Shown: positions 17,614-60,361, numbered from the stretch's first letter. The stretch: 64,000 nucleotides of DNA from Octopus sinensis (GCF_006345805.1 NC_043012.1:53940001-54004000), one strand, 5' to 3'. The notes: generated by a model not told the origin, from the sequence alone. A program made the numbers and translations.

Positions 17614-17688
17614 GTGAGTAAGTGAGTGTGACAAGGAGATTGCACGGTTTAGTTTTATGAAAATTCATGCGATGTTATCTTCAATTAG

Positions 17689-18056: not shown

Positions 18057-18119
18057 GTGAGTCCTAGTTTATTTGTTTTGCTGTGTACGTGTGTCTATAG
18101 CCTTTTATTTTGTTATTTG

Positions 18120-22124: not shown

Positions 22125-22469
22125 GTCGATAATGGATCGATAACGAACAGCGAATTCAACCAATATTTCAACGGTACTGAAACAATAGTAGCTGGGAAAT
22201 TATCAGACAGTTACGTTAAACCAACTTCGTGGAATCTTGTCGCTAGAACAAGCACTGGAATGATAAAACGCTCAAAGAAATTTAAAACAATTCGCTTAGA
22301 TAAGTCTAAAAAGAAGTTCGGTTTTCTGACAGATAATGAAGTCGAAAACATACCCGAAAATCTTTGGGCTTACCTAAATATTAAACAAACTATAGATAAA
22401 TTGACAATTACTACTAATGAAAAGGAGAAAGGAAAATTATCGAAACAACTTTTGGATCTTTCTCTGAAG
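22125..22469 (+). CDS. ITIH-like gene, internal exon (post-vWA region)
   Basis: ttttcag-type acceptor at 22122-22124 and aag|gtaagt donor, phase 0/0. Encodes VDNGSITNSEFNQYFNGTETIVAGKL...ENLWAYLNIKQTI...LLDLSLK, matching the ITIH YFxGxExxVAGKL and ExLWAYLTI...LxLSLxY motifs. Confidence 0.93.
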
Positions 22470-23149
22470 GTAAGTGTAATTGATCATTCTGGCAAATAAC
22501 ATAATTTTCTTTTAATTATAGTTTTATATTTTGGCACGGGGGGAGGGTCTAAATCGATTACATCGATCCTAGTGCTCAACTGGTACTTATGTTATGCAAA
22601 GATGACCTCGGTGGAATTTGAACTCAGAATGTAAAGACAGACGAAAACCCGCTAAGTATTTTACCCAGTACCATAACGATTGTGCCAAATCACCACCTTT
22701 AATTTTTTTTTTATTATTGAAACTTACTCAAGTTCTACTTAAGTGAGTGAGCATAGCTGTTGCTTGAAATATTTCGTTTCATTTAAGCCCTAAGCTTTTC
22801 AAATGATTTAGTTCAGATAACATTGCATTAATCTAATTAGATAGATTGGTACACCTGAAACTGTAAAGGCATAGGAAAATAAATACCGTAAACCTGAGAA
22901 AGATAGCTTCAGTCCATTTCCTAGGAGATGAATAACATGGCGTTCACCTGATACCCATAGACTATCATGAAATTTGAAATCACCAAGATAGGAAGAAGTT
23001 AATTCAGTTGGAATAAACATGATGTTTGTAGTGTGATAGAATGAAGGAATTCCATGCGATTTTATGAGAGTTTATCTCGAACTAAAACCACAGACATTAG
23101 ATTAGATTGGTGTAGTATAGTAAGAAATTTAAAGGAGGAATTTTGGCTG

Positions 23150-23483
23150 AATACAGTTCCCTTCATTCACGTGACTTTTTGCTGTTCAGAAAGGGATGAA
23201 CGCCACGTAATCACGTGAATCCAGTTCCCTTCATTTACGTGACTTTTTGCCGTTCAGAAAAAGATGAACGTCACGTAATCAAGTGAATCCAGTTCCCTTC
23301 ATTTACGTGACTTTTTGCCGTTCAGAAAGGGATGAACGTCACGTAATCACGTGAATCTAGTTCCCTTCATTTACGTGAATTTTTGCCGTTCAGAAAGGGA
23401 TGAATGTCACGTAATCACGTGAATCCAGTTCCCTTCATTTACGTGACTTTTTGCCGTTCAGAAAGCGATGAACGTCACGTGAT
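23150..23483. repeat. 68 bp minisatellite, ~4.9 copies
   Basis: cagttccc recurs at 23154, 23222, 23290, 23358 (tagttcc) and 23426. Confidence 0.95.
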
Positions 23484-36029: not shown

Positions 36030-39000
36030 GCGGTGTGTTGGTTTGCATACACACAGTCATATCTACACCAATATTCTAACAACATACACCACATAGAACC
36101 ACAATGGAATAAATCACTGAGAGATACAAAGTTCGCCTTTTGGAAGATTATCGAAAACAACAACACAGCGGATATATATACGAAAAACGGCTCAATCGGA
36201 CACCGTTAATTCTCCCTCGCAAACTCCTGATCAAAGCCATTACAGATGAACCTGAAGCACAAAAACGCCTCAGGGAAAGAATGACAGTGGATAAATGGAA
36301 ATGGAAATGGAACTTCTAAAACCGAGGGCACAGACGAATGATGAAAAATCCATCGATGAAGAGATCAACCAAGAAATTTGCTAAATGACCGAAGGTATCG
36401 ACCTAGAGAAGATCTCCAAATTATGGAAAGAGGATTGTGATAAAGAAGAACTGAAATCCCTCCAACGCTGAGAAAAAAGTGTCACTTGGTTCTCAAACCA
36501 TGAAACTGTCTTTCAGAGTACGTTTCCAACAACCCTTTCCTGAAAATAAGAAAATCAAAACAACACTCAAACACAGACTCACACCTATGTAAAAAAAAGG
36601 AACCATCACCCCTACCAAAAAAATAAAAAGAATACAAGACCTAACCCTAACTTTGTAACTCACCAGCGATACAACATCCGGAGTACCTAAACTTCAAACA
36701 GAGAAATGAAATAACACTACCAGCAGGATAGTCATTGTAATCTCCTTCCCGTAAGGAGTTACCAACGAAACTTTCGTTCTAACAATCTACTAAACAAACC
36801 ACGCACAACAAACCCGTACCATACGCAATAATTACCAATGACGTCTCCCTAAAACACCACATCCGAACATGGGATATCGGGATACACCTTTCGATGCCCT
36901 TCCAAGAACCCGCACCATAAATCACAACAGGGCACCTCGCAACAACAAGGAGCAAATACACAACAGCTACCGTCCCAATCACCTCAATTATGTTTTAGAC
37001 CCAATACGCAAACACAGAAACACGCAAACATAGAGACACCAGACAGACAGGAAGAACCAAAAGTGATAAAAATCATCAATCTAATTCACAAAGAACTAAC
37101 AGCAAACCAAATCAACATACTCTCCAAAGGGCTCAAGTTTACACCCCACCTCCCAACGCCCCAACTACAACGGAATAAAAGAAGACGTCGCAGAATTCTG
37201 TAGAAAACTACGACTCGCTGAGGAGCTCTACGACAAATTCAAGGAGGACGAATCGTTAGTCCGAAAAAGAAGTAACTGAGCAAAACTCTTGATCATTTCT
37301 GTGAATACGTCTCGAATTTCCCATATCAACATATACAGAAACAAAACCACAAGCCAAACTTCAGCAAAAAAGAATGGACTGAGCTGAACAAATTAAAAGA
37401 GGATAAAACAATAACAATCAAAGAGGCTGATAAGGGAAGTGCAGTTGTCTTAATGGACACGGTATACTATATAACTCTAGTACTATCCATATTAGAAGAC
37501 AAAATATGAAAAGGTCCAACACTACAGGCAGCAGAAAATAATCTATGTTAAACCTATACAGAGAAAGGCTCACCAAGGAATACGACTATATGACCAATTT
37601 CAAAAGTAAATCCAGTCAATTCTACGGTATTCCTAAGATACACAAAAGTGAGAAATTAAATATCGCATGCAGGATAGCCACAGACATAATAATCAAAGTC
37701 CTTTCGCCTAATGACCTCAAATTGAGACCTAGAATAACAGGTCCCGCATGTGAAACCCACCACCTCAGTAAATTTTTTAGATACCCTCTTAAAACCATTC
37801 CTCAAGCATATCAAAAGCTACATAAGAGATGACTTGGATATGCTCAATCACCTCCCTAAAACAATAAACAAAAGCACCCTACTAGTATCCTTCAATGTAG
37901 TCATCTTCTATTCGAATATCCCCCACAACCTAGGAATAGAGGCAATTCAGCTCTGGCTAGAGAATTACGCCAATGAATTCCCACATCGCATCGAAAAAGA
38001 ATTCGTAATAAAAGGGCTAAAATTCATTTTGGAGAATAACTACATGTCTTCAAAGACAACTTCTATCGACAAAAATCGGGGACTGCGATGGGTGCTAGAA
38101 TGGCTCCCTACTTTGCTAACCTAGTCATGGGATATCTTGAAATCAGTCTTTATCGTTAGGTAATAGAAAAATACTGCAACCCATTCTCACTCTACATAGA
38201 AATTAACTGCAAGATATATCTGGATGACTGTTTCATTCTTTAGCATGAAAGCATAGAGAGACTTAAAGAATTTTAAGCACTATAAATGGACTTGACGTAA
38301 ACATTCAATTTATGATGGAATATAGCCATCGACAACTTCCTATCCTCGACATCATCATTAAGAAATCTAACAACGAAATAGAAACAAATATATACTATAA
38401 GCCCACGGACTCCAAGCAGTATGTACCGTTCGACTCATGTCACCGCGGACACACTAGAATAAATATCCCTTTCAACCTATCAAAAAGGATTTGTACCATA
38501 GTTTCTAATAATAGCACCAGGGGCATACGACTACATGAACTAAAGTATACACTCATCACCAGGAACTACCTACCATCACTAATTGACATATGCTTTTAAC
38601 GTACTCTACAACTCAACAGCCATGAACTCAGACATCCCAAATTAAAGAAGAATTTACAACGAAAAGCTCTACCATACATCTCCACACACAAGCCTCTTAA
38701 CAATGAAACCTTCAACACCATCCTCCAAAGCATTCCCCTTCTAAAAAGGGACCAGAATGAATTTAATTCTCCAAACGCACACCATCATAAAAGCAAAAGG
38801 CAGCCCAAATCTATGAGAAGTCTCCTAACACAAACCCGAATACCCTCAACAACAACACTGAAGCCGTCAGTAAAAAAATGCGGTAGACCAAACTGTGGTA
38901 TATGCGTCAATCTAATTGAGGGATCAGAGATCTCTTTCAAACAGGGTCAACGTTTCACAGTGAAAAGCAACTTCCCATGTGCTTCGGAGAACCTGATATA

Positions 39001-39730
39001 CGTATTAACCTGCTCTGGATGTCGAGAGCAATATATAGGCCAAACAAAACATAGTCTACATCAAAGATCCCAGACCAAAATTCGGAAAAAGAGAAAAATA
39101 GCATTCAGCGAAAACATCGACATTCGCGTCAAAAGCAAACAACCAAGCTTCAGAATCTTTCCCCTCTATCAATTCAAGGACAATACTTTATCACAAAATA
39201 CTAACCCATTCTGAATGCATCCACAACAAATGACACTAACACCAGGACCTTAGAATAACACCCACGCAAATATTTAAAACGATATATTCAAATCAGTTAC
39301 CTCAAGAATTTATTCAGAACGATTTCAATCACTACTATCATCCACAACGAGTCACTTTTAGTCACTTGACAATTTAAAAGGATTCCATCAACCTTCTGCT
39401 ACTGTCATACCTCCCCCGCATTCTTTTATTAGTCTTTCACTTCTTTTCCTCCTCCTCCGCTGCCTCCTTTCTCTACTACTACTGCTTAAACAATCAAAGA
39501 AAAGAATGCATATCCAACTGGATGCTGCTAACTACCTAGAACCCACAAGAGTGAATAGGAGAGACAAAAACATACAGAAAAATGGAAAATGTCCCTTGCA
39601 TTTCAAAACTATAGAATAAATTTTTTAAAAAAACATTTCATTTAATTTTTTCACAATTTAATTATTTTTCATACTTTACTCTAAGTTGAAAACGTCGCAA
39701 TGACTAAAACCGATACTAAAATGTTCTTCA
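36030..39730 (+). mobile_element. Decayed, near full-length Penelope-like retroelement (RT + Cys linker + GIY-YIG endonuclease; Neptune-like)
   Basis: Motifs across frames: LSKGLKFTP, IKEADKGSAVVLMD, FYGIPKIHK, SYIRD..D.L, GTAMG..APTFANLVMGYLE, YLDDCFIL, YYKPTDSKQY..F.SCH, CGRPNCGIC, NLIYVLTCSGCREQYIGQT. Many frameshifts and stops. Confidence 0.93.
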
Positions 39731-39757
39731 TGATAAAATTATTTTAGCATTGTCTTG

Positions 39758-39928
39758 AGTGGCTGTGTGGTAAGTAGCTTGCTTACGAACCACATGGTTC
39801 CGAGTTCAGCCCCACTGCGTGGCACCTTAGGCAAGTGTCTTCTACAATATCCTCGATCCGACCAAAGCCTTGTGAGTGGATTTGGTAGAAGGAAAGTGAA
39901 AGAAGCCCGTCGTATATATGTATGTATG

Positions 39929-39994
<66 letters not shown>

Positions 39995-43474: not shown

Positions 43475-44482
43475 TTAATATATATATATATATAACTCCC
43501 TAGAAAGAAAGGAAGGAAGGAAGAAAGAACGAAAGAAACGAAGGAAGTGTATGTACGGTAGTCTGATGTGTATGCATACATCTATGTATGCATGTTTATG
43601 TGTATACCTGTGTATGTGTGTATGCTTGTATGTATAAGTAAGATGTTTTTGTGAAGCAAAACAACATTCTTTACTTAGCTGTTGTAAAACAAGTGTTTGG
43701 CAGAGAATATTACTATGTCAACTTACAAGTGAAGTCTACAATTGGAATGTTAACAAATGTTACATACGTTTTATACTATGAATTCTTCAAGAGTACGTGT
43801 CATTCTTCAAGTTGCATAAATTCAATTTTTTGCGCGTAGAAGAAACTATAACACGTTAAAAGTCTGATATACGAGTAGATATTTTATGTAACTGATCCGT
43901 GAAAATGTCAGTTTTTATTTCCCTTTCGAGAGATACGAAGTTAGAAACTACATCTTTTATTGATATCTGGATGTGTATCAGTTGAGTGGTAAATATTTTT
44001 TAGATGAGTGATGTGTGTGTTTATGAGCGAAACACCTAAGCACCACGCCATTCCGGCAGGAAGTGATGGCGAACTTCTGTTGACTCTTTCGCCACAACTT
44101 TCTTCGTCTGTCTTTACGTTCTGAGTTCAAATTCCGCCGAGGTCGACTTTGCCTTTCATCCTTTCGGTGTCGATACATTAAGTACCAGTTGCGTACTAGA
44201 ATCTATCTAATCGACTTGCACTCTCACCCAAAATTTCGGGCCTTGTGCTTAGAGTAGAAAAGAATAAAATATTTTTAGATGTGAGATGAGGCTGGGCTGG
44301 CGGAAGTCTACAGTGCTTGTAACACGGAGAAGTAAGTTATAGCTTTGAAATTCAATACTTCACATACTTTACATCGACTATATCTAGAGATGTACGAGGA
44401 AAGGGATATATAAGTATATGTGTGTATGTTAACGTGTGTCTTTATATATATTTACACACACATACTCACAAATATATATATG

Positions 44483-47400
44483 TTTATATAAAATTAATTA
44501 AGGGTAGAAATTGATATTTATCAATTAAGACCAGTGGTCTAGCATATTAAAAAAGAATCCGAAGATTAAAATATTTATATATACCAATTAAGGACTGAAC
44601 ACGAAAAGTGGACAGTCAACATGCTAGATATAGACGTCAAATCGCCATTCACCACAAAAGATTATGTTCTCAGATCAAACTCAGCACAAAACCATAGCAA
44701 TAAACAAGTGAAAAATATACGAAATAAAATAATTACCCATGTACTAATTAGTTTCGGCTGTTATTTTCCGCAAGGAAAACTGCAGCCATCATCAGCATGG
44801 TCCGTTATAAATGCAATTTGCTGGACTAGATGCAAACACGATACCGAAATATCGCGTGCATGGAGTTCAGCCTATTACATTTGAATATACCTTTCAAATG
44901 CCTTTACTTTGGCGCGTTGAGGCCCGAGAAAACTAGCCTGCAGCATAATAATTAGCAGCAGTCAATTTATCGGTTAGAGAACATATTATTTATATAAAAT
45001 TAATTAAGGTAGAAATTGATATTTATCAATTAAGACCAGTGGTCTAGCATATTAAAAAAGAATCCGAAGATTAAAATATTTATATATACCAATTAAGGAC
45101 TGAACACGAAAAGTGGACAGTCAACATGCTAGATATAGACGTCAAATCGCCATTCACCACAAAAGATTATGTTCTCAGATCAAACTCAGCACACAACCAT
45201 AGCAATAAACAAGTGAAAAATATACGAAATAAAATAATTACCCATGTACTAATTAGTTTCGGCTGTTATTTTCCGCAAGGAAAACTGCAGCCATCATCAG
45301 CATGGTCCGTTATAAATGCAATTTGCTGGACTAGATGCAAACACGATACCGAAATATCGCGTGCATGGAGTTCAGCCTATTACATTTGAATATACCTTTC
45401 AAATGCCTTTACTTTGGCGCGTTGAGGCCCGAGAAAACTAGCCTGCAGCTAATAATTAGCAGCAGTCAATTTATCGTTAGAGAACATATATATTTATATA
45501 AAATTAATTAAGGGTAGAAATTGATATTTATCAATTAAGACCGTGGTCTAGCATATTAAAAAAGAATCCGAAGATTAAAATATTTATATATACCAATTAA
45601 GGACTGAACACGAAAAGTGGACAGTCAACATGCTAGATATAGACGTCAAATCGCCATTCACCACAAAAGATTATGTTCTCAGATCAAACTCAGCACAAAA
45701 CCATAGCAATAAACAAGTGAAAAATATACGAAATAAAATAATTACTCATGTACTAATTAGTTTCGGCTGTTATTTTCCGCAAGAAAACTGCAGCCATCAT
45801 CAGCATGGTCCGTTATAAATGCAATTGCTGGACTAGATGCAAACACGATACCGAAATATCGCGTGCATGGAGTTCAGCCTATTACATTTGAATACCTTTC
45901 ATGCCTTTACTTTGGCGCGTTGAGGCCCGAGAAAACTAGCCTGCAGCTAATAATTAGCAGCAGTCAATTTATCGGTTAGAGAACATATTTATTTATATAA
46001 AATTAAATAAGGTAGAATTGATATTTATCAATTAAGACCAGTGGTCTAGCATATTAAAAAAGAATCCGAAGATTAAAATATTATATATACCAATTAAGGA
46101 CTGAACACGAAAAGTGGACAGTCAACATGCTAGATATAGACGTCAAATCGCCATTCACCACAAAAGATTATGTTCTCAGATCAAACTCAGCACAAAACCA
46201 TAGCAATAAACAAGTGAAAAATATACGAATAAAATAATTACCCATGTACTAATTAGTTTCGGCTGTTATTTTCCGCAAGGAAAACTGCAGCCATCATCAG
46301 CATGGTCCGTTATAAATGCAATTTGCTGGACTAGATGCAAACACGATACCGAAATATCGCGTGCATGGAGTTCAGCCTATTACATTTGAATATACCTTTC
46401 AAATGCCTTTACTTGGCGCGTTGAGGCCCGAGAAAACTAGCCTGCAGCTAATAATTAGCAGCAGTCAATTTAATCGGTTAGAGAACATAGTTATTATATA
46501 AAATTAATTAAGGGTAGAAATTGATATTTATCAATTAAGACCAGTGGTCTAGCATATTAAAAAAGAATCCGAAGATTAAAATATTTATATATACCAATTA
46601 AGGACTGAACACGAAAAGTGGACAGTCAACATGCTAGATATAGACGTCAAATCGCCATTCACCACAAAAGATTATGTTCTCAGATCAAACTCAGCACAAA
46701 ACTATAGCAATAAACAAGTGAAAAATATACGAAATAAAATAATTACCCATGTACTAATTAGTTTCGGCTGTTATTTTCCGCAAGGAAAACTGCAGCCATC
46801 ATCAGCATGGTCCGTTATAAATGCAATTTGCTGGACTAGATGCAAACACGATACCGAAATGTCGCGTGCATGGAGTTCAGCCTATTACATTTGAATATAC
46901 CTTTCAAATGCCTTTACTTTGGCGCGTTGAGGCCCGAGAAAACTAGCCTGCAGCTAAGAATTAGCAGCAGCAGTCAATTTATCGGTTAGAGAACATAGTT
47001 ATTTATATAAAATTAATTAGGGTAGAAATTGATATTTATCAATTAAGACCAGTGGTCTAGCATATTAAAAAAGAATCCGAAGATTAAAATATTTATATAT
47101 ACCAATTAAGGACTGAACACGAAAAGTGGACAGTCAACATGCTAGATATAGACGTCAAATCGCCATTAACCACAAAAGATTATGTTCTCAGATCAAACTC
47201 AGCACAAAACCATAGCAATAAACAAGTGAAAAATATACGGAATAAAATAATTACCCATGTACTAATTAGTTTCGGCTGTTATTTTCCGCAAGGAAAACTG
47301 CAGCCATCATCAGCATGATCCGTTATAAATGCAATTTGCTGGACTAGATGCAAACACGATACCGAAATATCGCGTGCATGGAGTTCAGCCTATTACATTT

Positions 47401-48623
47401 GAATATACCTTTCAAATACCTTTACTTTGGCGCGTTGAGGCCCGAGAAAACTAGCCTGCAGCTAATAATTAGCAGCAGTCAATTTATCGGTTAGAGAACA
47501 TATTTATTTATATAAAATTAATTAAAGGTAGAAATTGATATTTATCAATTAAGACCAGTGGTCTAGCATATTAAAAAAGAATCCGAAGACTAAAATATTT
47601 ATATATACCAATTAAGGACTGAACACGAAAAGTGGACAGTCAACATGCTAGATATAGACGTCAAATCGCCATTAACCACAAAAGATTATGTTCTCAGATC
47701 AAACTCAGCACAAAACCATAGCAATAACAAGTGAAAAATATACGGAATAAAATAATTACCCATGTACTAATTAGTTTCGGCTGTTATTTTCCGCAAGGAA
47801 AACTGCAGCCATCATCAGCATGGTCCGTTATAAATGCAATTTGCTGGACTAGATGCAAACACGATACCGAAATATCGCGTGCATGGAGTTCAGCCTATTA
47901 CATTTGAATATACCTTTCAAATGCCTTTACTTTGGCGCGTTGAGGCCCGAGAAAACTAGCCTGCAGCTAATAATTAGCAGCAGTCAATTTATCGGTTAGA
48001 GAACATATTTATTATATAAAATTAATTAAAGGTAGAATTGATATTTATCAATTAAGACCAGTGGTCTAGCATATTAAAAAAGAATCCGAAGACTAAAATA
48101 TTTATATATACCAATTAAGGACTGAACACGAAAAGTGGACAGTCAACATGCTAGATATAGACGTCAAATCGCCATTCACCACAAAAGATTATGTTCTCAG
48201 ATCAAACTCAGCATAAAACCATAGCAATAAACAAGTGAAAAATATACGAAATAAAATAATTACCCATGAACTAATTAGTTTCGGCTGTTATTTTCCGCAA
48301 GGAAAACTGCAGCCATCATCAGCATGGTCCGTTATAAATGCAATTTGCTGGACTAGATGCAAACACGATACCGAAATATCGCGTGCATGGAGTTCAGCCT
48401 ATTACATTTGAATATACCTTTCAAATGCCTTACTTGGCGCGTTGAGGCCCGAGAAAACTAGCCTGCAGCTAATAATTAGCAGCAGTCAATTTATCGGTTA
48501 GAGAACATATTTATTTATATAAAATTAATTAAGGGTAGAAATTGATATTTATCAATTAAGACCAGTGGTCTAGCATATTAAAAAAGAATCAGAAGATTAA
48601 AATATTATTATACCAATTAAGGA
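44483..48623 (-). repeat. Tandem array of ~505 bp hammerhead-containing monomer, ~8.2 copies (ribozyme strand is minus)
   Basis: atgctagatatagacg recurs at 44621, 45126, 45630, 46127, 46631, 47139, 47645 and 48148 (spacing 497-508 bp). Copies are near-identical. Confidence 0.98.
44737..44800 (-). ncRNA. Type I hammerhead ribozyme, satellite copy 1. Further copies at 45242-45305, 45746-45808, 46242-46305, 46747-46810, 47255-47318, 47760-47823, 48264-48327
   Basis: Minus strand reads CCAUG-CUGAUGA-U-GGCUG-cag-UUUUCC-uugc-GGAAAA-uaa-CAGCC-GAAA-CUAAUUAG-UA-CAUGG. This gives stem I (5 bp), the full core, stem II, GAAA, a palindromic stem III and a GUA site. Predicted cut between 44742 and 44741. 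Confidence 0.92.
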
Positions 48624-48993
48624 GAACATAATCTTTTGTGGTGAATGGCGATTTGACGTCTATCTAGCATGTTGACTGTCCACTTTTCGTGTTCAGTCCT
48701 TAATTGGTATATATAAATATTTTAATCTTCGGATTCTTTTTTAATATGCTAGACCACTGGTCTTAATTGATAATATCAATTTCTACCCTTATTAATTTTA
48801 TATAATTAAATATGTTCTCTAACCGATAAATTGACTGCTGCTAATTATTAGCTGCAGGCTAGTTTTCTCGGGCCTCAACGCGCCAAAGTAAAGGCATTCG
48901 AAAGGTATATTCAATGTAATAGGCTGAACTCCATGCACGCGATATTTCGGTATCGTGTTTGCATCTAGTCCAGCAAATTGCATTTATAACGGA

Positions 48994-49057
48994 CCATGCT
49001 GATGATGGCTGCAGTTTTCCTTGCGGAAAATAACAGCCGAAACTAATTAGTACATGG
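48994..49057 (+). ncRNA. Type I hammerhead ribozyme, inverted satellite copy
   Basis: ccatg ctgatga t ggctg cagttttccttgcggaaaataa cagcc gaaa ctaattag ta catgg is read directly on the + strand. Confidence 0.92.
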
Positions 49058-49498
49058 GTAATTATTTTATTTCGTATATTTTTCACTTGTTTATTGCTAT
49101 GGTTTTGTGCTGAGTTTGATCTGAGAACATAATCTTTTGTGGTGAATGGCGATTTGACGTCTATATCTAGCATGTTGACTGTCCACTTTTCGTGTTCAGT
49201 CCTTAATTGGTATATATATATATTTTAATCTTCGGATTCTTTTTTAATATGCTAGACCACTGGTCTTAATTGATAATATCAATTTCTACCCTTAATTAAT
49301 TTTATATAAATAAATATGTTCTCTAACCGATAAATTGACTGCTGCTAATTATTAGCTGCAGGCTAGTTTTCTCGGGCCTCAACGCGCCAAAGTAAAGGCA
49401 TTTGAAAGGTATATTCAAATGTAATAGGCTGAACTCCATGCACGCGATATTTCGGTATCGTGTTTGCATCTAGTCCAGCAAATTGCATTTATAACGGA

Positions 49499-49562
49499 CC
49501 ATGCTGATGATGGCTGCAGTTTTCCTTGCGGAAAATAACAGCTGAAACTAATTAGTACATGG
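49499..49562 (+). ncRNA. Type I hammerhead ribozyme, inverted satellite copy
   Basis: Same motif. Stem II 3' strand is cagct (C>T, giving a G-U wobble). Confidence 0.88.
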
Positions 49563-49729
49563 GTAATTATTTTATTTCGTATATTTTTCACTTGTTTATT
49601 GCTATGGTTTTATGCTGAGTTTGATCTGAGAACATAATCTTTTGTGGTGAATGGCGATTTGACGTCTATATCTAGCATGTTGACTGTCCACTTTTCGTGT
49701 TCAGTCCTTAATTGGTATATGTTTATATA

Positions 49730-49806
49730 TATATATAGAGAGAGAGAGAGAGAAACACACACACACATATATATGTATATATAATATATATATGTATATA
49801 TATGTA

Positions 49807-49859
<53 letters not shown>

Positions 49860-49919
49860 ATACATATATATATATATATGTATGTGTATACATATATATA
49901 TATATATACATGTATGTGT

Positions 49920-49960
<41 letters not shown>
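49730..49960. repeat. Compound (TA)n/(GA)n/(CA)n microsatellite (representative of dozens in the window)
   Basis: Direct inspection. Confidence 0.95.
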
Positions 49961-49962
<2 letters not shown>

Positions 49963-50219
49963 GTCGTGCGTGCGCAGAGGTGGAGGTGAAGTATTAACCC
50001 ATCTGTAATTTAATTACTAACATATTACTTTTATATTCTACCTTTGGGAGTTGTGGTTTTTGTTATTGCTGTTGGTATGTATATGAGAGAAAGAATGTGT
50101 GTGTGTATACGTGTGTGAAAGAGAGAGAGAGAAACAAACAAAGAGTGACAGAGACAGAGAGCGAATGTGTATGGCGACTGATGAAGTAATCATTGAGTCA
50201 ACTTGATTGGAGGAATTGG

Positions 50220-50297
50220 TTTGAGCCAAATGGCCCTTGATTTGAGCCAAATGGCCCTTGATTTGAGCCAAATGGCCCTTGATTTAAGCCAAATGCC
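50220..50297. repeat. 21 bp minisatellite, ~3.7 copies
   Basis: ttgagccaaatggcccttgat repeated. Confidence 0.9.
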
Positions 50298-53240: not shown

Positions 53241-53945
53241 GGCGGTGAGCTGGCAGAATCGGTAGCAGGCCGGGCGAAATGTTTAGCGGTATTTCGTCTG
53301 CCGCTACGTTCTGAGTTCAAATTCCACCGAGGTCGACTTTGCCTTTCATGCTTTCGGGGTCGATTAAATAAGTACCAGTTACGCACTGGGGTCGATATAA
53401 TCGACTTAATCCGTATGTCTGTCCTTGTTCGTCCCCTCTGTGTTTAGACCCTTGTGGGTAGTAAAGAAACATGTATTTCATCTGCCGTTACGTTCTGAGT
53501 TCAAATTCCGCCGAGGTCGACTTTGCCTTTCATACTTTCGGGGTCGATTAAATAAGTACCAGTTACGCACTGGGGTCGATATAATCGACTTAATCCGTAT
53601 GTCTGTCCTTGTTCGTCCCCTCTGTTTAGCCTCTTGTGTGTAGTAAAGAAATAGGTATTTCGTCTGCTGCTACGTTCTGAGTTCAAATTCCGTCGTAGTC
53701 TACTCTGCCTTTCATCCTTTCGGGATCGATTTAATAAGTACCAGTTACGCACTGGGGTCGATATAATCGACTTAATCCGTTTGTCTGTCCTTGATTGTCC
53801 CCTCTGTGTTTAGTCCTTGTGGGTAGTAAAGAAATAGGTATTTCGTTTGCCGCTACGTTCTGAGTTCAAATTCCGCCGAGGTCGACATTGCCTTTCATCC
53901 TTTCGGGGTCGATAAATTAAATACCAGTTGCGTACTGCGATCGAT
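53241..53945 (+). mobile_element. tRNA-derived SINE with ~183 bp internal unit tandemly amplified ~3.6 times
   Basis: Head gcggtgagctggcagaatc. Unit start tatttcgtctgcc at 53290, 53474, 53656 and 53839, each with B-box-like gagttcaaattcc. Confidence 0.85.
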
Positions 53946-54020
53946 CTAATTTACACATGCATTTTTAGTCATTATTTTATTTGGCTAATTTTTATTGAAC
54001 TTCTATTTCAGAAAATAACT

Positions 54021-55052
54021 ATGACAGGCCCTAAGCTTACTAATGAAATGAAAAGTCATGTTGTGATTGTGGCTTCGAAGGCTAAACATGATTATTTAGA
54101 AATTTTCTGAAAGTTGCAAGATTTTTTGTCCAAAAGATTCGGTGTGACTTAGAGAGAGAAGATGGAAGCGTATTTCCTGTATCAATACGTACAAATCATT
54201 CCAAATGCTCTCATTCTATCAGGACACCTGAACTTATTCAGAAAGTTAAGCAAAACATTGAAGATAATCCAAGATAATCAATGAGGTCAGTTGCAAAAAA
54301 AATTTGTGTGTGAGAAACAATTAGAATTGTTGTGCATGAAGACATCAGATACAAATCTTTCGAGAGAAGAAGAAGTGAATCCATGTCAGAAAGAACAAAA
54401 GAAAAGGGTTTAATCAGATCCCCAAAACTTTTGAACAAACTTAAAAATCCATCAGAAGATGGTGTGATTTGGTTTTTCTCAGACGAGAAAAACTTTGACT
54501 AGGGCTAGAAAACTAACAGAAGAAATGGCAGATGGCTATGTGCAGACCCTAATGTTCCAACAGTAATGCACACAAAATTTCTTGCAAGTGTCATAGTTTT
54601 GGGTGTTGCTAGCAATGAAGGACATGTGATGCCTACTCACTTTTTTCCACAATGCCTTAGGATGAATGCTACTGCGTATACTGAAGTTCTAGATAGAGTT
54701 GTTAATCCTGGATCAACAGTAAATGCAATGGAAGGCTTTATGTCTTTGAACATGATGCTGTACCATCACACAAGGCTCAAATGACACAGAAATGGCCGAC
54801 AGTTTGCATGAACCCATCCCACCCAACGTTTGGCCTCCTTATTCTCCAGATCTCAATCCACTGGACTACTATATATGGAGCATCGTTGAGAAAAATGTCA
54901 ATGAACACCCACATATCACCAAAGATTCTTTGAAAGCCGCCATAGTTCGAGTCATGTCCGATATGAAGAATGACCACTTAATCCGAGTTTGTGAACGATT
55001 TCGACCATGCGTGTAGGCAGTTATTGATGCTTATGGTGGTTTTATTGAATGA
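54021..55052 (+). pseudogene. Decayed Tc1/mariner transposase, approximately DD37D (maT-like)
   Basis: WFFSDEKNFD..MHTKFLASVIVLGVASNEGHVMP..F..LRMNA..Y..VL..D(A)VPSHK..WPPYSPDLNPLDYYIWS..IE*. Frameshifts and stops are present. Confidence 0.9.
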
Positions 55053-55271: not shown

Positions 55272-55396
55272 TATATATTATACAAACATACAATTATATA
55301 TATATATATTATATATATACAAACATACACATTATATATATAATATATATATAATATATAATATATATATATTATATATATATACAAACAACACAT

Positions 55397-55432
<36 letters not shown>

Positions 55433-55444
55433 ATAATAATAATA

Positions 55445-58400
55445 AATATTAGGGAATAAATCCAAAATTACAGGGAAAAAATCAGATTTAGGATTAAATC
55501 CAATTTTATAGTAAAATATTATAAAATATTATTAGAGACAAAACCACTATTTTGCAAAACAAACAAGGAAAGACTTAATCAATACATAAAATTTAATAAA
55601 TAGTCAAAAAAACCGCCACTACAATTGTTTTGTCTTGATCGACAATCTTCAGGTGGACTTCCAATCTAAAATATCAATATTTTAAAATATAAAAAATAAT
55701 TTTAAAATAATTAAGTATGAAATGAAAAAATATAAATATATAATCCATATATAACCTATATATAATCCATATATAATCAATATATAAACAATATATAAAC
55801 TAAAATAAACCTATCAACAATTAAATATAATATAAAATATAATAAATATAAAACAAACAAAAAAAATAATAATAATATAATAATAAATATAATATACACC
55901 CATACACATATACCTAATTATATATAACCATATCTAACTAATACACTAAATCACACCCCTATATATATCCCTATACATACACATAAAAACGTCTAGGCAA
56001 CTATAAATAAATAAAATAGCTAAATACTTCAACACAATACTTATTCATACTCCACACACACACACATACAACCCACATTCACGCTCTAAAACGGACATCA
56101 CTTAAAATTATGAAGGAGAAATGGAATAAATGGAATTAAAAATATATTCACTTGGTAAACGAACACTACTTAAAAATTATGAATGAAACAATGCAATAAA
56201 ACAACAGACATCGCAAATAGACACAAATTACTACGAATTCCTTAACAAACCTACCATGATAACCAAAACTCATAAAAAACATATAATGATAAAATCTCCC
56301 TTACTAAACTCTATAACATACCTATATAGCAATCCCCTAACCTAAACATTCACACACAAATACACACACGTAAACCACACACCACGACATATACAAATAC
56401 CCTCACCACTTACACATCCTATACATACATATAAACCTCAAATATACTCCAAAAACCCACTCACCCCACACAGACAAATAAACACAAAATTATGAATGGA
56501 TTCTTTATAAAACTACCATGATAAGCTAAAACCACAAAACATAAATGATAAAACCTCCCTTTACTAAACACTATAACATACTTATATAGCAATCCTTTAA
56601 CCTATACATTCACACACAATACACACACGTAAAACCACACACCCATAACAAATACAAACACCCACCCCACTCACACACACCCACAAGTAATATAAGCCTC
56701 AACATATACACCAAAACAAAATTACTTTACCAAGGAAACTAAACATATGTATAAAAAGTATAACCGCTCTGGAAACGAACATCTTTTAAAATAATGAATG
56801 GAGAAATGGAATAAATGGAATTAAAAATAATATTCACGTGGCAAAACGAACACCACTCAAAAATTATGAATGAAACAATGTAATAAAACAACCAACATCG
56901 AAAATAGACAAATTACCACGAATTCCCTAAAAAAAAAAAACCATGATAAACCAAAACTCTTAAAAACATATAACGATAAAATCTCCCTTTGCTAAACTCT
57001 ATAACAATCCCCCTAACCTAAACATTCACACACAAAAACACACACGTAAACCACAGACCCACGACTTATACACATACCTATACTAACATAAACCTCAATA
57101 TACACCAAAAACCCACTCCCTCCCCACACAGACAAATTAACACATACATCCCAAAACCTAAATAACAAAACCCATATACACATTCACACACAAACACACC
57201 ACACGCAAACACACACACACAACGATACATATACTCCCTCACATATACGAATACATACTCATAAACTCGATATATACAACAATATTTACACACCCAACTC
57301 ATACAGATAAATAAATTATACAACTAAAAAACTCACACACAATCTCATATACATAAACACTCCAATAAAAAACAACATTAAATACATCGTAATTAACCAG
57401 AATATCAAAAATAACAATATGACATAAGGAGAAATAAAATACATACTTACAAGTCAGTTTCAAATTATGAAGTGAAATTAAATTCTTAGCCGTTAAAAAA
57501 ACCAACCAAAATTACGTTACCATAGAAATATAACTTATGTAAAAAAAAGAATACGCGCCATGGAAAGTAAAGTCATTTAAAATTATGAATGGAGAAATAG
57601 AATAAATGGAACTAAAAACTATATCCACGTGGCAACCAACACTACTTAAAAAAATTTATTATGAATGGATTCTTAATAAAACTACCATAATAAATTATTA
57701 TAATAATTTATTATGGTAGTTTATTAAAGAATCCATTCATAATAAATTTTTTTAAGTAGTGTTGGTTTGCCACGTGGATATAGTTTTTAGTTCCATTTAT
57801 TCTATTTCTCCATTCATAATTTTAAATGACGTTTACTTTCCATGGCGCGTATTCTTTTTTACATAAGTTATATTTCTATGGTAACGTAATTTTGGTTTGG
57901 TTTTTTTAACGGCTAGAATTTAATTTCACTCATAATTTGAAACTGACTTGTAAGTATGTATTTTATTTCTCCTTATGTCATATGTGTTTTTTGATATTCT
58001 GGTTAATTACGATGTATTTAATGTTGTTTTTTATTGGAGTGTTTATGTATAGAGATTGTGTGTGAGTTTTTAGTTGTATAATTTATTTATCTGTATGAGT
58101 GTGGGTGTGTAAATATTGTTGTATATATCGAGTTTAGTGAGTGAGTATGTATGCGTATATGTGAGGGAGTATATGTATCTGTTGTGTGTGTGTGTTTTGC
58201 GTGTGTGTGTGTTTGTGTGTGAATGTGTATATGGGTTTGTTTTTAGGGTTTGGGATGTATGTGTTAATTTGTCTTGTGTGGGGAGGGAGTGGGTTTTTGG
58301 TGTATATTGAGGTTATAAGTTAGTATAGGTATGTGTATAAGTCGTGGGTCTGTGGTTTACGTGTGGTTTTTTGTGTGTGAATGTTTAGGTAGGGGGATTG

Positions 58401-59888
58401 TTATAGAGTTTAGCAAAGGGAGATTTTATCGTTAATGTTTTTAAGAGTTTTGGTTTATCATGGTTTTTTTTTTTTAGGGATTCGTGGTAATTTGTCTATT
58501 TTCGATGTTGGTTGTTTTATTACATTGTTTCATTCATAATTTTGAGTGGTGTTCGTTTTGCCACGTGAATATTATTTTTAATTCCATTTATTCCATTTCT
58601 CCATTCATTATTTTAAAAGATGTTCGTTTCCAGAGCGGTTATACTTTTATACATAGTTTAGTTTCCTTGGTAAAAGTAATTTTGTTTGGGTATATGTTGA
58701 GGCTTATATGTACTTGTGGGTGTGTGTGAGTGGGGTGGGGTGTTTGTATTTGTATGGGTGTGTGGTTTACGTGTGTGTATTTGTGTGTGAAGTATAGGTT
58801 AAAGGGATGCTATATAAGTATGTTATAGTGTTTAGTAAGGGAGGTTTTATCATTTATGTTTTGTGAGTTTTAGCTTATCATGGTAGTTTTATAAAAGAAT
58901 CCATTCATAATTTTTGTGTTATTTGTCTGTGTGGGGTTGAGTGGGTTTTTGGAGTATATGTGAGGTTTATATGTATGTATAGGTATGTGTAAGTGGTGAG
59001 GTTATTTGTATATGTCGTGGGTGTGTGGTTTACGTGTGTGTATTTGTGTGTGAATGTTTAGGTTAGGGGGATTGCTATATAGGTATGTTATAGAGTTTAG
59101 TAAAGGGAGATTTTATCATTATATGTTTTTATGAGTTTTGGTTTATCATGGTAGGTTTGTTAAGGAATTCGTAGTAATTTGTGTATTTGCGATGTCTGTG
59201 TTTTATTGCATTGTTTCATTCATAATTTTTAAGTAGTGTTCGTTTTACCAAGTGAATATAATTTTTAATTCCATTTATTCCATTTCTCCGTTCATAATTT
59301 TAAGTGATGTCCGTTTTCTAGAGCGTGAATGTGGGTTGTATGTGTGTGTGTGTGGGAGTATGAATAAGTATTGTGTTGAAGTATTTAGCTATTTTATTTA
59401 TTATAGTTGCCTAGACGTTTTTATGTGTATGTATAGGGATATATATAGGGGTGTGATTTAGTGTATGTAGTTAGATATGGTTATATATAATTAGGTATAT
59501 GTATGGGTGTATATATAGTTTATTATTATATTATTATATTTTTTTGTTTTGTTTTATATTTTATATTTTATATTTTATATTTAATTGTTGATAGGTTTAT
59601 TTTAGTATATATTGTTTATATATTGATTATATATGGATATATATAGGTTATATATGGATTATATATTTATATTTTTTTCATTCATACTTTAATTATTTTA
59701 AAATTATTATTTTATATTTAAAAAATATTGATATTTAGATTGGAAGTCCACCTGAAGATTGTCGATCAAGACAAGAAACAATTGTGTAGTGGCGGTTTTT
59801 TTTGACTATTTATTAAAATTTTATGTATTGATTAAGTCTTTCCTTGTTTGTTTTGCAAAATAGTGGTTTTGTCTCTAATAATATTTAT
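55445..59888. repeat. ~4.4 kb zero-spacer palindrome (arms ~55520-57700 / 57701-59888) of a Penelope pLTR-like AC-rich element with internal sub-repeats
   Basis: Centre actaccataataaattatta|taataatttattatggtagt is an exact palindrome. Arms mirror each other with scattered small indels. Confidence 0.9.
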
Positions 59889-60361
59889 ATATAATATAAT
59901 ATCAGAGCATTCTCTGCGCAATTCTCCGCGTTTTTTTCTTTTCATTGCTTATGCTCGTTCAAAAAATATTTTCTCGAAACCGATTATACTGTGTTGGGGT
60001 GGGAATTAGCATGGATCATTATTAAACGCTAAAATTGAATTGGACTGTCTGGAAATTAGGTGGATACTAATCGTTATTTATCTTTCACTTCCTCCAGTTA
60101 CGTTTCCGGTCAGCTAACTTAATTTACAGGCGTCGGCTGCACATACATATACATATACAAACCTGTATACATGCATAAATATACATAAACGCGTGTGGAT
60201 GTGTGTGAGTGTATGTGTGTATGTGCGAGTGTGTGAAAGTCATGAATCTGAAAATACCACTAATGTTTTAAATCTTTTTTAGTTGTTATATACATAAATG
60301 AAACTATGTATGTGTATAAAATATGTCTAATTATAATATATATATATACTATATATATATA

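What the first reader, a model, noticed from the sequence alone, without database searches (positions are those of the whole stretch)
44483..49720. ~505 bp tandem satellite in which every monomer encodes an intact hammerhead ribozyme (candidate octopus retrozyme / ribozyme satellite)
Seen in sequence: ten monomers carry CCAUG-CUGAUGA-U-GGCUG...CAGCC-GAAA-CUAAUUAG-UA-CAUGG with all invariant core nucleotides and a two-tier stem II (GGCUG/CAGCC, then UUUUCC/GGAAAA with a UUGC loop). The variants seen are tolerated or peripheral: one GUU site at 48269, a G-U wobble at 49543, stem I edge changes, and a 1-nt deletion at the stem II apex in copy 3. The rest of the monomer has further hairpins (gctggac..cgata/tatcg..gttcagc, gctaat/attagc, agacca/tggtct) and no conserved ORF. 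Established knowledge: hammerheads in tandem repeats are known from newt satellite 2, Schistosoma Sm-alpha, Dolichopoda pDo500, Penelope pLTRs and non-autonomous retrozymes that make circular RNAs. A weak palindromic stem III is typical of hammerheads that cleave as dimers, and an extra nucleotide between A9 and G10.1 is tolerated in CChMVd. Inference: a multimeric transcript would self-process into ~505 nt monomers that could circularise and be re-inserted by a Penelope-type RT. Adjacent copies are ideally placed to form double hammerheads through the 8-nt palindrome CUAAUUAG. I do not recognise this monomer as a described family.
Basis: partly seen in the sequence, partly recalled or inferred. 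Interest (0 to 1): 0.92.

Follow-up and report, generated by a model that had tools for sequence, protein, structure and literature searches.

The report
Octopus hammerhead retrozyme, Penelope-style insertion
The 5.2-kb repeat is one insertion of a small, recently mobile, non-coding retroelement whose 505-nt unit carries a complete hammerhead ribozyme motif; its insertion scars match those left by Penelope-like retrotransposons, so it is a new member of the known 'retrozyme' class, not a satellite.

Summary
Ten 505-bp monomers at 44,483-49,720 each carry a full type I hammerhead motif. I expect 0.02 such motifs per random 64 kb, and an equally good one about once per 204 Mb.

- The array is not head-to-tail. 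It has two arms placed head to head, with 8 ribozymes on the minus strand and 2 on the plus strand. The junction is at 48,620/48,621.
- It is not a satellite. The genome holds 359 exact ribozyme copies in roughly 150-170 dispersed short arrays.

Every insertion I examined sits in a (TA)n microsatellite. The outer 3' ends fall on the unit's two TATATA tracts, and the inner 5' ends are variable. Wherever both orientations occur, the arms are head to head (20 of 20 loci). These are the published marks of Penelope-like element (PLE) insertions, and intact PLE-type reading frames are abundant in this genome.

Folding predicts an inactive single ribozyme, a textbook double hammerhead for two copies, and a very stable circular monomer (z = -7).

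Not shown: cleavage, circular RNA, or the specific partner element. Rfam's hammerhead model misses the motif, and the young copies give no power to detect selection.

Verdict: a new member of a known kind, of moderate interest.

The parts
44483..49720 (.). One complete insertion of the 505-bp family: two arms head to head, with their 3' ends pointing outward
   Evidence: The flanks are microsatellite on both sides.
44483..48620 (-). Left arm: 8 full monomers plus a 5'-truncated one that starts near unit position q385. The outer 3' end is at q~502 (..CCCTTAATTAATTTTATATAAA).
   Evidence: register: q1 = 45,490 and q505 = 44,986 on the minus strand.
48621..49720 (+). Right arm: a 5'-truncated monomer from q~315, one full monomer, and a terminal monomer ending at q~415 (..GTCCTTAATTGGTATAT)
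44737..44800 (-). Hammerhead motif 1 (64 nt): CCAUG-CUGAUGA-U-GGCUG..CAGCC-GAAA-CUAAUUAG-UA|CAUGG. Predicted cleavage is at 44,742|44,741.
45242..45305 (-). Hammerhead motif 2, consensus sequence
45747..45807 (-). Hammerhead motif 3: 1-nt deletion at the stem II apex; stem I reduced to 4 bp
46242..46305 (-). Hammerhead motif 4, consensus sequence
46747..46810 (-). Hammerhead motif 5, consensus sequence
47255..47318 (-). Hammerhead motif 6: stem I edge C>U (U.G pair)
47760..47823 (-). Hammerhead motif 7, consensus sequence
48264..48327 (-). Hammerhead motif 8: GUU cleavage triplet instead of GUA
48994..49057 (+). Hammerhead motif 9, consensus sequence, opposite orientation
49499..49562 (+). Hammerhead motif 10: U11.1 (G.U at the base of stem II)
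44477..44490 (+). TATATGTTTATATA across the left junction. Possible target-site duplication, copy 1; ambiguous because of low complexity.
   Evidence: Read. The same 14-mer lies at 49,716-49,729.
49716..49729 (+). TATATGTTTATATA across the right junction. Possible target-site duplication, copy 2.
49721..49959 (.). Right-flank microsatellite, (TA)n/(GA)n/(CA)n: the target
44394..44482 (.). Left-flank TA/TG-rich microsatellite: the target

Best explanation
The region is a single insertion of a non-autonomous, non-coding retroelement of the metazoan 'non-LTR retrozyme' kind.

Proposed mechanism:
1. The 505-nt unit is transcribed as a multimer.
2. Its type I hammerhead has a 3-bp, self-complementary stem III. 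It is inactive alone and becomes active when two copies pair into a double hammerhead. This cuts the multimer after GUA into unit-length RNA.
3. That RNA can be ligated into a highly self-paired circle.
4. The enzymes of a Penelope-like element (reverse transcriptase plus GIY-YIG endonuclease) nick a (TA)n microsatellite.
5. The TA-rich DNA ends prime on one of the unit's two UAUAUA tracts (unit positions about 415 and 504). Copying runs round the circle, or along a multimer, and produces tandem cDNA.
6. The second DNA end does the same in the opposite direction. The result is two arms head to head, with fixed 3' ends outside and variable 5' ends in the centre.

Shown here: the motif, the predicted folds, the dispersal, the insertion anatomy, and the presence of intact PLE-type frames.
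Inferred: transcription, cleavage, circularisation, priming on a circle, and the identity of the helper element.
For: Motif:
- All core nucleotides and three helices are present in 10 of 10 copies, far above chance.

Folding:
- A single domain folds into an inactive alternative in which CUGAU pairs with AUUAG. Two domains give the double hammerhead, and the dimer is more stable by 5 kcal/mol.
- The circular monomer of the ribozyme strand has MFE -138.9 kcal/mol, z = -7.0, and is 69% paired. Its complement reaches -109.0, z = -3.8.

Dispersal:
- The family has at least 204 BLAST matches on many chromosomes at 92-100% identity.
- There are 359 exact copies of the 38-nt core plus stem II string, and 0 in the reversed control.

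Insertion anatomy in 21 insertions:
- 19 have two head-to-head arms.
- The outer ends fall almost only at q~415 or q~504, and 16 of the 19 two-armed insertions have one of each.
- The inner ends are variable.
- All 21 lie in (TA)n.
- In the first 100 genome-wide hits, all 20 loci with both orientations are ordered minus then plus; none is reversed.
- Direct target duplications of differing length: 33 bp (L050), 22 bp (L044) and about 14 bp (window).
- Rare variants are fixed in both arms in 11 of 19 insertions, which indicates one event and one template.
- No terminus lies at the ribozyme cut site (q244|245). The template was therefore not a cleaved linear monomer.

Literature and helper elements:
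- Craig et al. 2021 (PMC8557442) list the hallmarks of PLE insertions as 5' truncation, an inverted 5'-truncated copy at the 5' end, a tail at one end, and (TA)n targeting. The family matches all four.
- The genome has 147 scored GIY-YIG hits from 4,846 candidates, in frames up to 883 aa.
- A second EN-bearing family has 16,673 candidates and intact 784-aa frames, themselves arranged head to head or in 4.4-kb tandems.
- Three subfamilies each inserted several times. Within the ribozyme they differ only by G-C to G.U changes at 10.1/11.1 and 10.2/11.2, with no core change.
- The published retrozyme model proposes exactly this route, with PLEs as the candidate helper (PMC7229834; preprint 10.64898/2026.07.22.740005).
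Against: - Rfam's Hammerhead_1 model does not report the motif at the gathering score, at E<=10 on the region, or on a 111-nt slice. None of its genome-wide hits is a copy of this family (only 74 of 265,664 candidates were scored).
- The ribozyme is not measurably better conserved than the rest of the unit in 83 unique copies. No two-sided compensatory change was found.
- The most numerous subfamily carries G.U at the normally G-C 10.1/11.1 pair, which may weaken catalysis.
- No autonomous PLE sharing the unit's ribozyme or 3' end was identified. The one decayed PLE in the window shows no similarity, and Pfam does not confirm that remnant.
- The unit is 505 nt, longer than the 150-450 bp quoted for the class.
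- The 'tail' is 89 nt rather than 30-40.
- No expression or cleavage data are available.
Confidence: 0.8

Rival explanations
1. A PLE-mobilised non-autonomous element in which the hammerhead is a passenger or relic inherited from a PLE pseudo-LTR. Copies arise from linear multimeric or read-through transcripts. Neither self-cleavage nor a circular RNA is needed.
For: - The ribozyme shows no extra conservation.
- The largest subfamily has G.U at 10.1/11.1.
- No insertion terminus lies at the cleavage site.
- Naiad PLEs proliferate without hammerheads, and Craig et al. raise the possibility that hammerheads merely parasitise PLEs.
- The compact HHR2 family in the same genome spreads with an A.C mismatch at 10.1/11.1.
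Against: - All core nucleotides are kept in the consensus of all three subfamilies.
- The ribozyme-strand circle is exceptionally stable, and 30 kcal/mol more stable than its complement. That points to selection on this RNA.
- The inactive-monomer, active-dimer fold is the same regulatory logic as in newt and axolotl elements that do make circles.
- Tandem multimers with ends at internal tracts are what rolling-circle copying of a circle would give.
Confidence: 0.15
2. An ordinary satellite DNA that happens to contain a hammerhead-like string and is amplified locally by unequal crossing-over.
For: Tandem arrangement with about 98% similar monomers. Newt satellite 2 was historically described this way.
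Against: - About 46 separate loci appear among the first 100 exact hits, on chromosomes C1-C5 alone.
- Arrays are short, from 0.2 to about 17 units.
- Termini are fixed, target duplications are present, the target is always (TA)n, and arms are always head to head.
- The chance rate of an equally good motif is 1 in 204 Mb or less.
Confidence: 0.02
3. A foldback-type DNA transposon whose long inverted terminal repeats are built from tandem subrepeats.
For: Two inverted arms of variable length made of tandem units, with conserved outer ends.
Against: - The two outer ends usually differ (q415 against q504), which does not fit a single transposase recognition end.
- Target duplications differ in length (about 14, 22 and 33 bp), as in target-primed reverse transcription.
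- The inner ends are random truncations with no middle domain.
- Single-arm insertions exist (L038, L041).
- The known PLE-type ORF family in the same genome shows the same head-to-head geometry.
Confidence: 0.02
4. The inverted arrangement is an assembly artefact: chimeric or foldback long reads collapsed at repeats.
For: - In L043 the flanking DNA itself is inverted on both sides.
- Craig et al. warn that such structures trouble assemblies.
Against: - The polarity is identical in 20 of 20 loci.
- The flanks differ on the two sides in the other loci.
- The asymmetric 415/504 ends are hard to produce by a foldback artefact.
Confidence: 0.01

Closest known systems
Metazoan non-LTR retrozymes (Cervera & de la Pena 2020, PMC7229834): coral, mussel and axolotl families
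   Same: - A type I hammerhead in every unit of a short dispersed tandem array.
- Low GC (34%).
- No LTR, primer-binding site, polypurine tract or ORF.
- Target duplications longer than 4 bp.
- A highly self-paired predicted circle.
- Co-existence with PLEs.
   Different: - The unit is 505 nt, against about 170-400 nt.
- Stem II is a 32-nt two-tier hairpin, and there is an extra U after A9.
- The copy number is modest (359 exact ribozymes, against 5,000-120,000).
- Head-to-head arms and exclusive (TA)n targeting are documented here. Neither is mentioned in that paper (0 hits for 'inverted'; no mention of (TA)n targeting).
- There is no expression evidence here.
Newt satellite 2 / axolotl HHR_Amex1 hammerheads
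   Same: Weak stem III capped by a palindromic loop. Cleavage is poor as a monomer and efficient as a dimer. The motif here is predicted to behave the same way.
   Different: - Stem III here is 3 bp within a 10-nt palindrome, against a single base pair plus a tetraloop.
- There is no sequence relationship.
- The loop 1/loop 2 tertiary contacts could not be recognised here.
Penelope-like elements and their pseudo-LTRs (Craig et al. 2021, PMC8557442; Cervera & de la Pena 2014)
   Same: - 5' truncation.
- Partial tandems.
- An inverted 5'-truncated copy at the 5' end.
- An extension at one end only.
- A (TA)n target.
- A hammerhead near the 3' region.
   Different: - No RT or EN coding region.
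- The extension is 89 nt, against 30-40.
- PLE hammerheads are usually minimal variants, whereas this one has long stems I and II.
- No sequence link to a specific PLE was found.
Non-autonomous Chlamys elements such as MRC1 (Craig et al. 2021)
   Same: [quoted passage not shown]
   Different: Those are green-algal and lack canonical hammerheads. They share their 3' ends with known autonomous families, a link not established here.
Plant LTR retrozymes (Cervera et al. 2016, PMC4918200)
   Same: Non-autonomous elements with a hammerhead that spread through circular RNA.
   Different: Those carry type III ribozymes in LTRs, with a primer-binding site, a polypurine tract and 4-bp duplications, and are mobilised by Gypsy elements. 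None of these features is present here.

Membership tests
Hammerhead ribozyme, type I | Conserved core: C3 U4 G5 A6 N7 G8 A9, G12 A13 A14, A15.1-U16.1, and H17 (not G) at the cleavage site | tested here: met
   All are present in 10 of 10 window copies, with one extra U between A9 and G10.1. An extra U at this position raised the rate in CChMVd.
Hammerhead ribozyme, type I | Three helices around the core, with helix I open (5' and 3' ends in helix I) | tested here: met
   - Stem I is 5 bp (CCAUG/CAUGG).
- Stem II is 5 bp, a 3x3 internal loop, 6-7 bp and a UUGC loop.
- Stem III is 3 bp within the palindrome ACUAAUUAGU.
Hammerhead ribozyme, type I | Match to the curated covariance model (Rfam RF00163) | tested here: not met
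   No hit at the gathering score or at E<=10. No family copy is among the genome-wide hits. The model has 45 positions. The likely causes are the extra U, the 32-nt stem II and the short stem III, but I could not test this.
Hammerhead ribozyme, type I | Covariation that supports the helices | tested here: inconclusive
   Only one-sided G-C to G.U changes at 10.1/11.1 and 10.2/11.2 distinguish the subfamilies. There are no two-sided changes. The family is about 2% diverged.
Hammerhead ribozyme, type I | Site-specific self-cleavage 3' of H17 | not testable with these tools
   Needs in vitro transcription or RNA-end mapping.
Metazoan non-LTR retrozyme | A type I hammerhead in each unit of short tandem repeats dispersed in the genome | tested here: met
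Metazoan non-LTR retrozyme | Unit of a few hundred bp (150-450 bp) with low GC (<45-50%) | tested here: inconclusive
   GC is 34%, which meets the criterion. The unit is 505 bp, slightly above the quoted range.
Metazoan non-LTR retrozyme | No LTR, primer-binding site or polypurine tract; no coding capacity | tested here: met
   Units are simple head-to-tail repeats. The longest run is 36 codons on the ribozyme strand, and the antisense run is not conserved.
Metazoan non-LTR retrozyme | Expressed as unit-length, highly self-paired circular RNA | not testable with these tools
   In silico only: circular MFE -138.9 kcal/mol, z = -7.0, 69% paired.
Metazoan non-LTR retrozyme | Co-existence with autonomous PLEs | tested here: met
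   GIY-YIG frames up to 883 aa. An EN-bearing family with intact 784-aa frames. A decayed copy in the window at 36,853-39,214, identified by motifs only; Pfam finds nothing there.
PLE-type insertion architecture | 5' truncation with an inverted 5'-truncated copy joined at the 5' end | tested here: met
   19 of 21 insertions examined. 20 of 20 two-orientation loci genome-wide are ordered minus then plus.
PLE-type insertion architecture | A short extension ('tail') at one end only | tested here: met
   16 of 19 two-armed insertions end at q~415 on one side and q~504 on the other. The extension is 89 nt, longer than the published 30-40 bp.
PLE-type insertion architecture | Insertion bias for microsatellites, (TA)n in particular | tested here: met
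   21 of 21 insertions lie in (TA)n. Literature.
PLE-type insertion architecture | A 3' end or ribozyme shared with an autonomous PLE of the same genome | not tested
   Only one decayed PLE was readable, and it shows no similarity.
Satellite DNA | Long homogeneous arrays at a few loci, expanded by unequal exchange, without insertion signatures | tested here: not met
   About 46 loci appear in the first 100 hits. Arrays are short, termini are defined, and target duplications are present.

The most novel reading that the evidence does not exclude
This family may be the clearest genomic record so far of how animal retrozymes integrate. Both DNA ends of a PLE-made break in a (TA)n tract would prime on two neighbouring UAUAUA tracts, 89 nt apart, of one circular or multimeric ribozyme RNA ('twin priming'). 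That would give head-to-head tandem arms with one q415 end and one q504 end. If so, retrozyme mobilisation by PLEs moves from a correlation (co-occurrence, pLTR similarity) to a mechanism with predicted junctions. It would also mean that such insertions create long perfect hairpins that could feed small-RNA pathways.
Probability: 0.4. Interest if true: 0.65.

Novelty: new member of a known kind. Interest (0 to 1): 0.5.

Why it matters
Retrozymes are known from corals, mussels, amphibians and plants. Which enzyme moves the animal ones is still argued from co-occurrence and, in frogs, from sequence similarity to PLE pseudo-LTRs. The authors of the 2026 preprint say they have little evidence about the life cycle.

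This octopus family is small and young, and its junctions are clean:
- a fixed (TA)n target,
- two defined 3' priming tracts,
- arms that are always head to head,
- target duplications of differing length.

It therefore gives independent structural support for PLE-mediated, target-primed integration from a circular or multimeric template.

It also extends the class to cephalopods. A search for 'hammerhead ribozyme' with 'octopus' returned five papers (four listed), none of which reports a hammerhead in an octopus genome; the retrozyme paper and the 2026 octopus repeat annotation do not mention one either.

The family also shows that Rfam's type I model misses such variants, so genome annotations will overlook them.

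In practice, a 505-nt unit with an inactive-alone, active-in-pairs ribozyme is a convenient natural scaffold for studying circular RNA formation in a mollusc.

Tried and rejected
- **TRF:** missed the array because its period limit is 500. The repeat finder recovered it.
- **Rfam at three sensitivities on the window, plus L041:** no hammerhead. The microRNA-like hits (mir-2513 at 48,554-48,768; MIR7504 and others in L041) are hairpins created by the head-to-head junctions, not genes.
- **Genome-wide RF00163:** finds other hammerheads, but none from this family.
- **Conservation of the ribozyme against the flanks:** no difference. I rejected it as a test because the copies are young, neutral insertions.
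- **Compensatory changes in the predicted rod and in the ribozyme:** 9 of 11 common transitions keep the pair, about 55% expected by chance (binomial p about 0.07, my own calculation). None is two-sided. This is weak evidence, and the structure was predicted from one of the sequences.
- **Antisense 104-codon open run:** intact in 26 of 83 copies, so rejected as a gene.
- **Pfam on the window's PLE-like pieces, singly and joined:** no RT or GIY-YIG hit. The identification rests on motifs: DKG, YGIPKIHK, CX4CX2C, and GIY-X10-YIG with two internal cysteines. It also rests on the behaviour of its gene family.
- **Coordinate overlap between the PF01541 list and the EN-ORF list:** none, so they are different families or non-overlapping capped samples.
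- **Similarity between the 505 unit, the HHR2 element and the PLE remnant's 3' region:** nothing beyond the AT-rich ends.
- **HHR2 or 505-family places next to listed PLE ORFs:** none in the right orientation.
- **A 64-nt degenerate pattern:** I replaced it with an exact 38-mer.
- **Enrichment of inner 5' ends at the cleavage site:** 4 of 38 lie at q249-261. That is too few, and BLAST boundaries are too imprecise, to use.

Full report
**1. What is in the sequence**

The stretch 44,483-49,720 is built from a unit of about 505 bp. Start-to-start spacings are 497-508 bp. TRF did not list the array because its longest period is 500.

The string CTGATGA..GAAAC occurs ten times, against 0.28 expected. 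Each occurrence is part of the 64-nt sequence CCAUG-CUGAUGA-U-GGCUGCAG-UUUUCC-UUGC-GGAAAA-UAA-CAGCC-GAAA-CUAAUUAG-UA|CAUGG. In hammerhead numbering it reads as follows:
- C3-A9 is CUGAUGA.
- One extra U follows A9.
- Stem II starts with G10.1-C11.1. It runs 5 bp, a 3x3 internal loop, 6 bp and a UUGC loop.
- G12 A13 A14 follow.
- Stem III is A15.1-U16.1, C-G and U-A around AAUU. The whole segment ACUAAUUAGU is a 10-nt palindrome.
- A17 is the cleavage nucleotide.
- Stem I is CCAUG/CAUGG and is open, which makes this a type I motif.

A descriptor I wrote requires the core, three helices and UH. It finds exactly these ten sites and one unrelated site, against 0.02 hits per random 64 kb. In 204 Mb of random sequence with the window's dinucleotide make-up, motifs with stems at least 5, 5 and 3 bp long appeared five times. 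One of those had G10.1-C11.1, and none had a self-complementary stem III.

**2.

Eight motifs are on the minus strand and two on the plus strand. The array is two arms that meet 5' end to 5' end at 48,620/48,621, with both 3' ends pointing outward.

The unit is also not local. A search of the window's own genome (2.72 Gb, 13,516 contigs) gave at least 204 matches at 92-100% identity on many chromosomes. The 38-nt core plus stem II string occurs exactly 359 times, with none in a reversed control. The first 100 of those fall into about 46 loci. I therefore estimate 150-170 insertions genome-wide.

**3. Anatomy of the insertions**

I fetched 20 other insertions with their flanks. I mapped them in a common register: q1 = 45,490 on the minus strand, ribozyme at q186-249, predicted cut at q244|245.
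- Nineteen of the 21 insertions, counting the window, have two head-to-head arms.
- The inner ends are at scattered unit positions, which is 5' truncation.
- The outer ends fall almost only at q~415 (..GTCCTTAATTGGTATATA) or q~504 (..CCCTTAATTAATTTTATATA).
- In 16 of the 19 two-armed insertions, one end is of each kind. If the two ends were chosen independently, the binomial tail is about 0.002 (my calculation).
- All 21 lie inside (TA)n microsatellites, and both kinds of terminus are the unit's own TATATA tracts.
- Among the first 100 genome-wide hits, every locus with both orientations has minus copies to the left of plus copies: 20 loci, with none reversed.
- Target duplications are mostly hidden by the microsatellite. 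They are visible where the flank has complexity: 33 bp in L050, 22 bp in L044, and a possible 14 bp (TATATGTTTATATA at 44,477-44,490 and 49,716-49,729) in the window.
- Rare variants are fixed in both arms in 11 of 19 insertions, and arm-specific fixed variants are few. The two arms therefore come from one event and one template lineage.
- No terminus lies at the ribozyme cut site.

**4. Comparison with Penelope-like elements**

Craig et al. 2021 describe PLE insertions as follows:
- They are 5'-truncated.
- They are often partial tandems.
- They often have an inverted 5'-truncated copy joined at the 5' end.
- They have a 30-40-bp tail at one end only.
- They show a strong bias for microsatellites: (TA)n for Naiads, with the CX2-5CxxC linker suspected for Neptune-type elements.
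- Their target duplications are hard to discern.

The 505-bp family shows every one of these features. The one difference is that its one-sided extension is 89 nt.

The genome is rich in candidate helpers:
- Pfam's GIY-YIG model scores above its cut-off at 147 scored places out of 4,846 candidates, in open frames up to 883 aa.
- The window carries a decayed, frameshifted element at 36,853-39,214 (+). It has the motifs KEADKGSAVV, FYGIPKIHK, CGRPNCGIC and LIYVLTCSGCREQYIGQT.
- Pfam does not recognise these fragments.
- The EN-like ORF of this remnant has 16,673 first-look relatives in the genome. Many lie in intact 784-aa frames, and neighbouring copies lie head to head (six pairs) or 4.4 kb apart in tandem (two pairs).
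- I found no sequence link between the 505-bp unit and this remnant.

**5. The RNA**

A single ribozyme domain folds with stems I and II, but CUGAU of the core pairs with AUUAG of stem III. That is an inactive alternative.

Two domains cofold into a double hammerhead with a 10-bp intermolecular helix III and unpaired cores. The energy is -53.4 kcal/mol, against 2 x -24.2. Amphibian elements behave the same way: their weak palindromic stem III gives poor cleavage as monomers and efficient cleavage as dimers (PMC7229834).

An extra U after A9 is not a defect. In the CChMVd ribozyme, replacing the extra A10 by U raised the cleavage rate 3-4 fold (PMC3705267, citing De la Pena & Flores 2001).

The circular 505-nt RNA of the ribozyme strand has an MFE of -138.9 kcal/mol. 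Shuffles average -104.3 (z = -7.0), and 69% of the bases are paired. The complementary strand reaches only -109.0 (z = -3.8). A 30 kcal/mol asymmetry is what G.U pairs selected in one RNA polarity produce.

GC content is 34%, and there is no conserved ORF.

**6. Selection**

In 83 unique full-length copies from 26 insertions, the ribozyme is not better conserved than the rest. It has 0.0226 variants per position per copy, against 0.0216 overall.

About half of its variation is C to U at 11.1 and 11.2. These changes mark three subfamilies:
- C-C at these two positions: 9 insertions, including the window.
- C-U: 13 insertions.
- U-C: 4 insertions.

Each subfamily is linked to other diagnostic sites and each inserted repeatedly. 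Both changes keep the pair as G.U, and no core nucleotide differs among the subfamilies.

Nine of eleven common transitions at predicted paired positions keep the pair, but none is two-sided. With about 2% divergence, the data have no power to show purifying selection. Copies of a retroelement decay neutrally after insertion.

**7. Other hammerhead-bearing elements**

The descriptor also found a compact motif that I call HHR2: CCAC-CUGAUGA-AUGUC..GACAU-GAAA-CAAUUG-UA-GUGG.
- It lies in L041 as a short head-to-head pair next to the 505-bp insertion.
- It also lies in the window at 59,748-59,792. This is the end of a 4.5-kb non-coding palindrome (55,343-59,895, centre 57,700/57,701) whose other arm has a broken copy.
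- The genome has 163 copies at up to 2 mismatches. All pairs are ordered minus then plus, and the 3' ends again run into (TA)n.

Rfam's type I model finds eight further hammerheads above its cut-off elsewhere in the genome. These include a tandem pair 431 bp apart.

So this genome holds several ribozyme-bearing non-autonomous families that share the same insertion style.

**8. Conclusion and limits**

The best reading is a cephalopod member of the metazoan non-LTR retrozymes, mobilised by PLE enzymes through target-primed reverse transcription. Priming would occur at the unit's UAUAUA tracts on a circular or multimeric template. This is the route proposed in the literature (PMC7229834; preprint 10.64898/2026.07.22.740005). 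Here it is supported by junction anatomy rather than by co-occurrence.

I did not verify the species.

A search for 'hammerhead ribozyme' with 'octopus' returned five papers (four listed), and none of them reports a hammerhead in an octopus genome. Cervera & de la Pena 2020 does not mention octopus or cephalopods, and the 2026 Octopus vulgaris repeat annotation does not mention hammerheads, retrozymes or satellites.

Cleavage, circular RNA, transcription and the identity of the helper element remain untested. The Rfam model's silence remains unexplained.

Noticed in passing
window 55343-59895: A 4.5-kb imperfect, non-coding palindrome centred at 57,700/57,701. Each arm ends with a compact hammerhead-like motif (HHR2): it looks intact at 59,748-59,792 (+), while the GAAA is broken at about 55,610-55,650 (-). 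Each motif lies about 100 nt before a terminus ..GTCTCTAATAATATT that runs into (TA)n. This explains the sign flip in base skew at about 58 kb.
   Followed up: partly
L041 1173-1526; genome-wide places: The HHR2 family has 163 copies at <=2 mismatches. Every pair is minus then plus, about 100-130 bp apart. Its main subfamily has an A.C mismatch at 10.1/11.1. HHR2 ends lie beside 505-family insertions in L032, L036, L041 and L048, which suggests that (TA)n tracts are hit repeatedly.
   Followed up: partly
window 36853-39214 (+): A decayed, frameshifted canonical EN+ Penelope-like element with motifs DKG, YGIPKIHK, CX4CX2C, and GIY-X10-YIG with two internal Cys. Pfam finds nothing there. Its EN ORF family has 16,673 first-look candidates in the genome and intact 784-aa frames.
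   Followed up: partly
window 39745-39993: A tRNA-derived SINE-like element (..GGTTCCGAGTTCAGCCCCACTGCGTGGCACC..) directly abutting a (TA)41 tract.
   Followed up: no
L043 (G000:C13:57655000-57661400): The DNA flanking this insertion is itself inverted on the two sides (at least 59 nt), and both termini are at q415. This is either a larger palindromic duplication or an assembly artefact.
   Followed up: no
L037 1382-1439 (-): A third hammerhead-like motif: UAUCA-CUGACGA-AGAG..CUCU-GAAA-UCGGCCCGA-UA-UGGUA. It has a 4-bp stem III and A10.1-U11.1. It could be chance.
   Followed up: no
G000:C16:25146363-25146839 and other places: Rfam Hammerhead_1 scores above its cut-off at 8 places in the genome. 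These include a tandem pair 431 bp apart and a head-to-head pair (C13:23,787,518-/23,788,041+). They are probably further retrozyme-like families.
   Followed up: no
window 5511-5942, 17661-18200, 22044-22499 (+): Open frames that look like exons of a von Willebrand A / inter-alpha-trypsin-inhibitor-like gene (weak VWA hit, E 6e-4). The retrozyme insertion lies more than 20 kb downstream. I could not tell whether it is intronic.
   Followed up: no
window 54756-55016 (+) and 13884-14357 (-): A Tc1/mariner-like transposase C-terminus (..SPDLNPLDYYIW..) and a LINE endonuclease fragment (Exo_endo_phos_2, E 3e-4).
   Followed up: no
window 48554-48768; L041 1292-1414: Sub-threshold Rfam microRNA hits (mir-2513, MIR7504, MIR5185 and others) are hairpins created by the head-to-head junctions of these insertions. 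They are a source of false microRNA calls.
   Followed up: yes
window 23148-23480, 53288-53950, 50216-50295: Other tandem repeats: 68 bp x 4.9, 182 bp x 3.6 (with a tRNA-like GTTCAAATTCC box), and 21 bp x 3.8.
   Followed up: no
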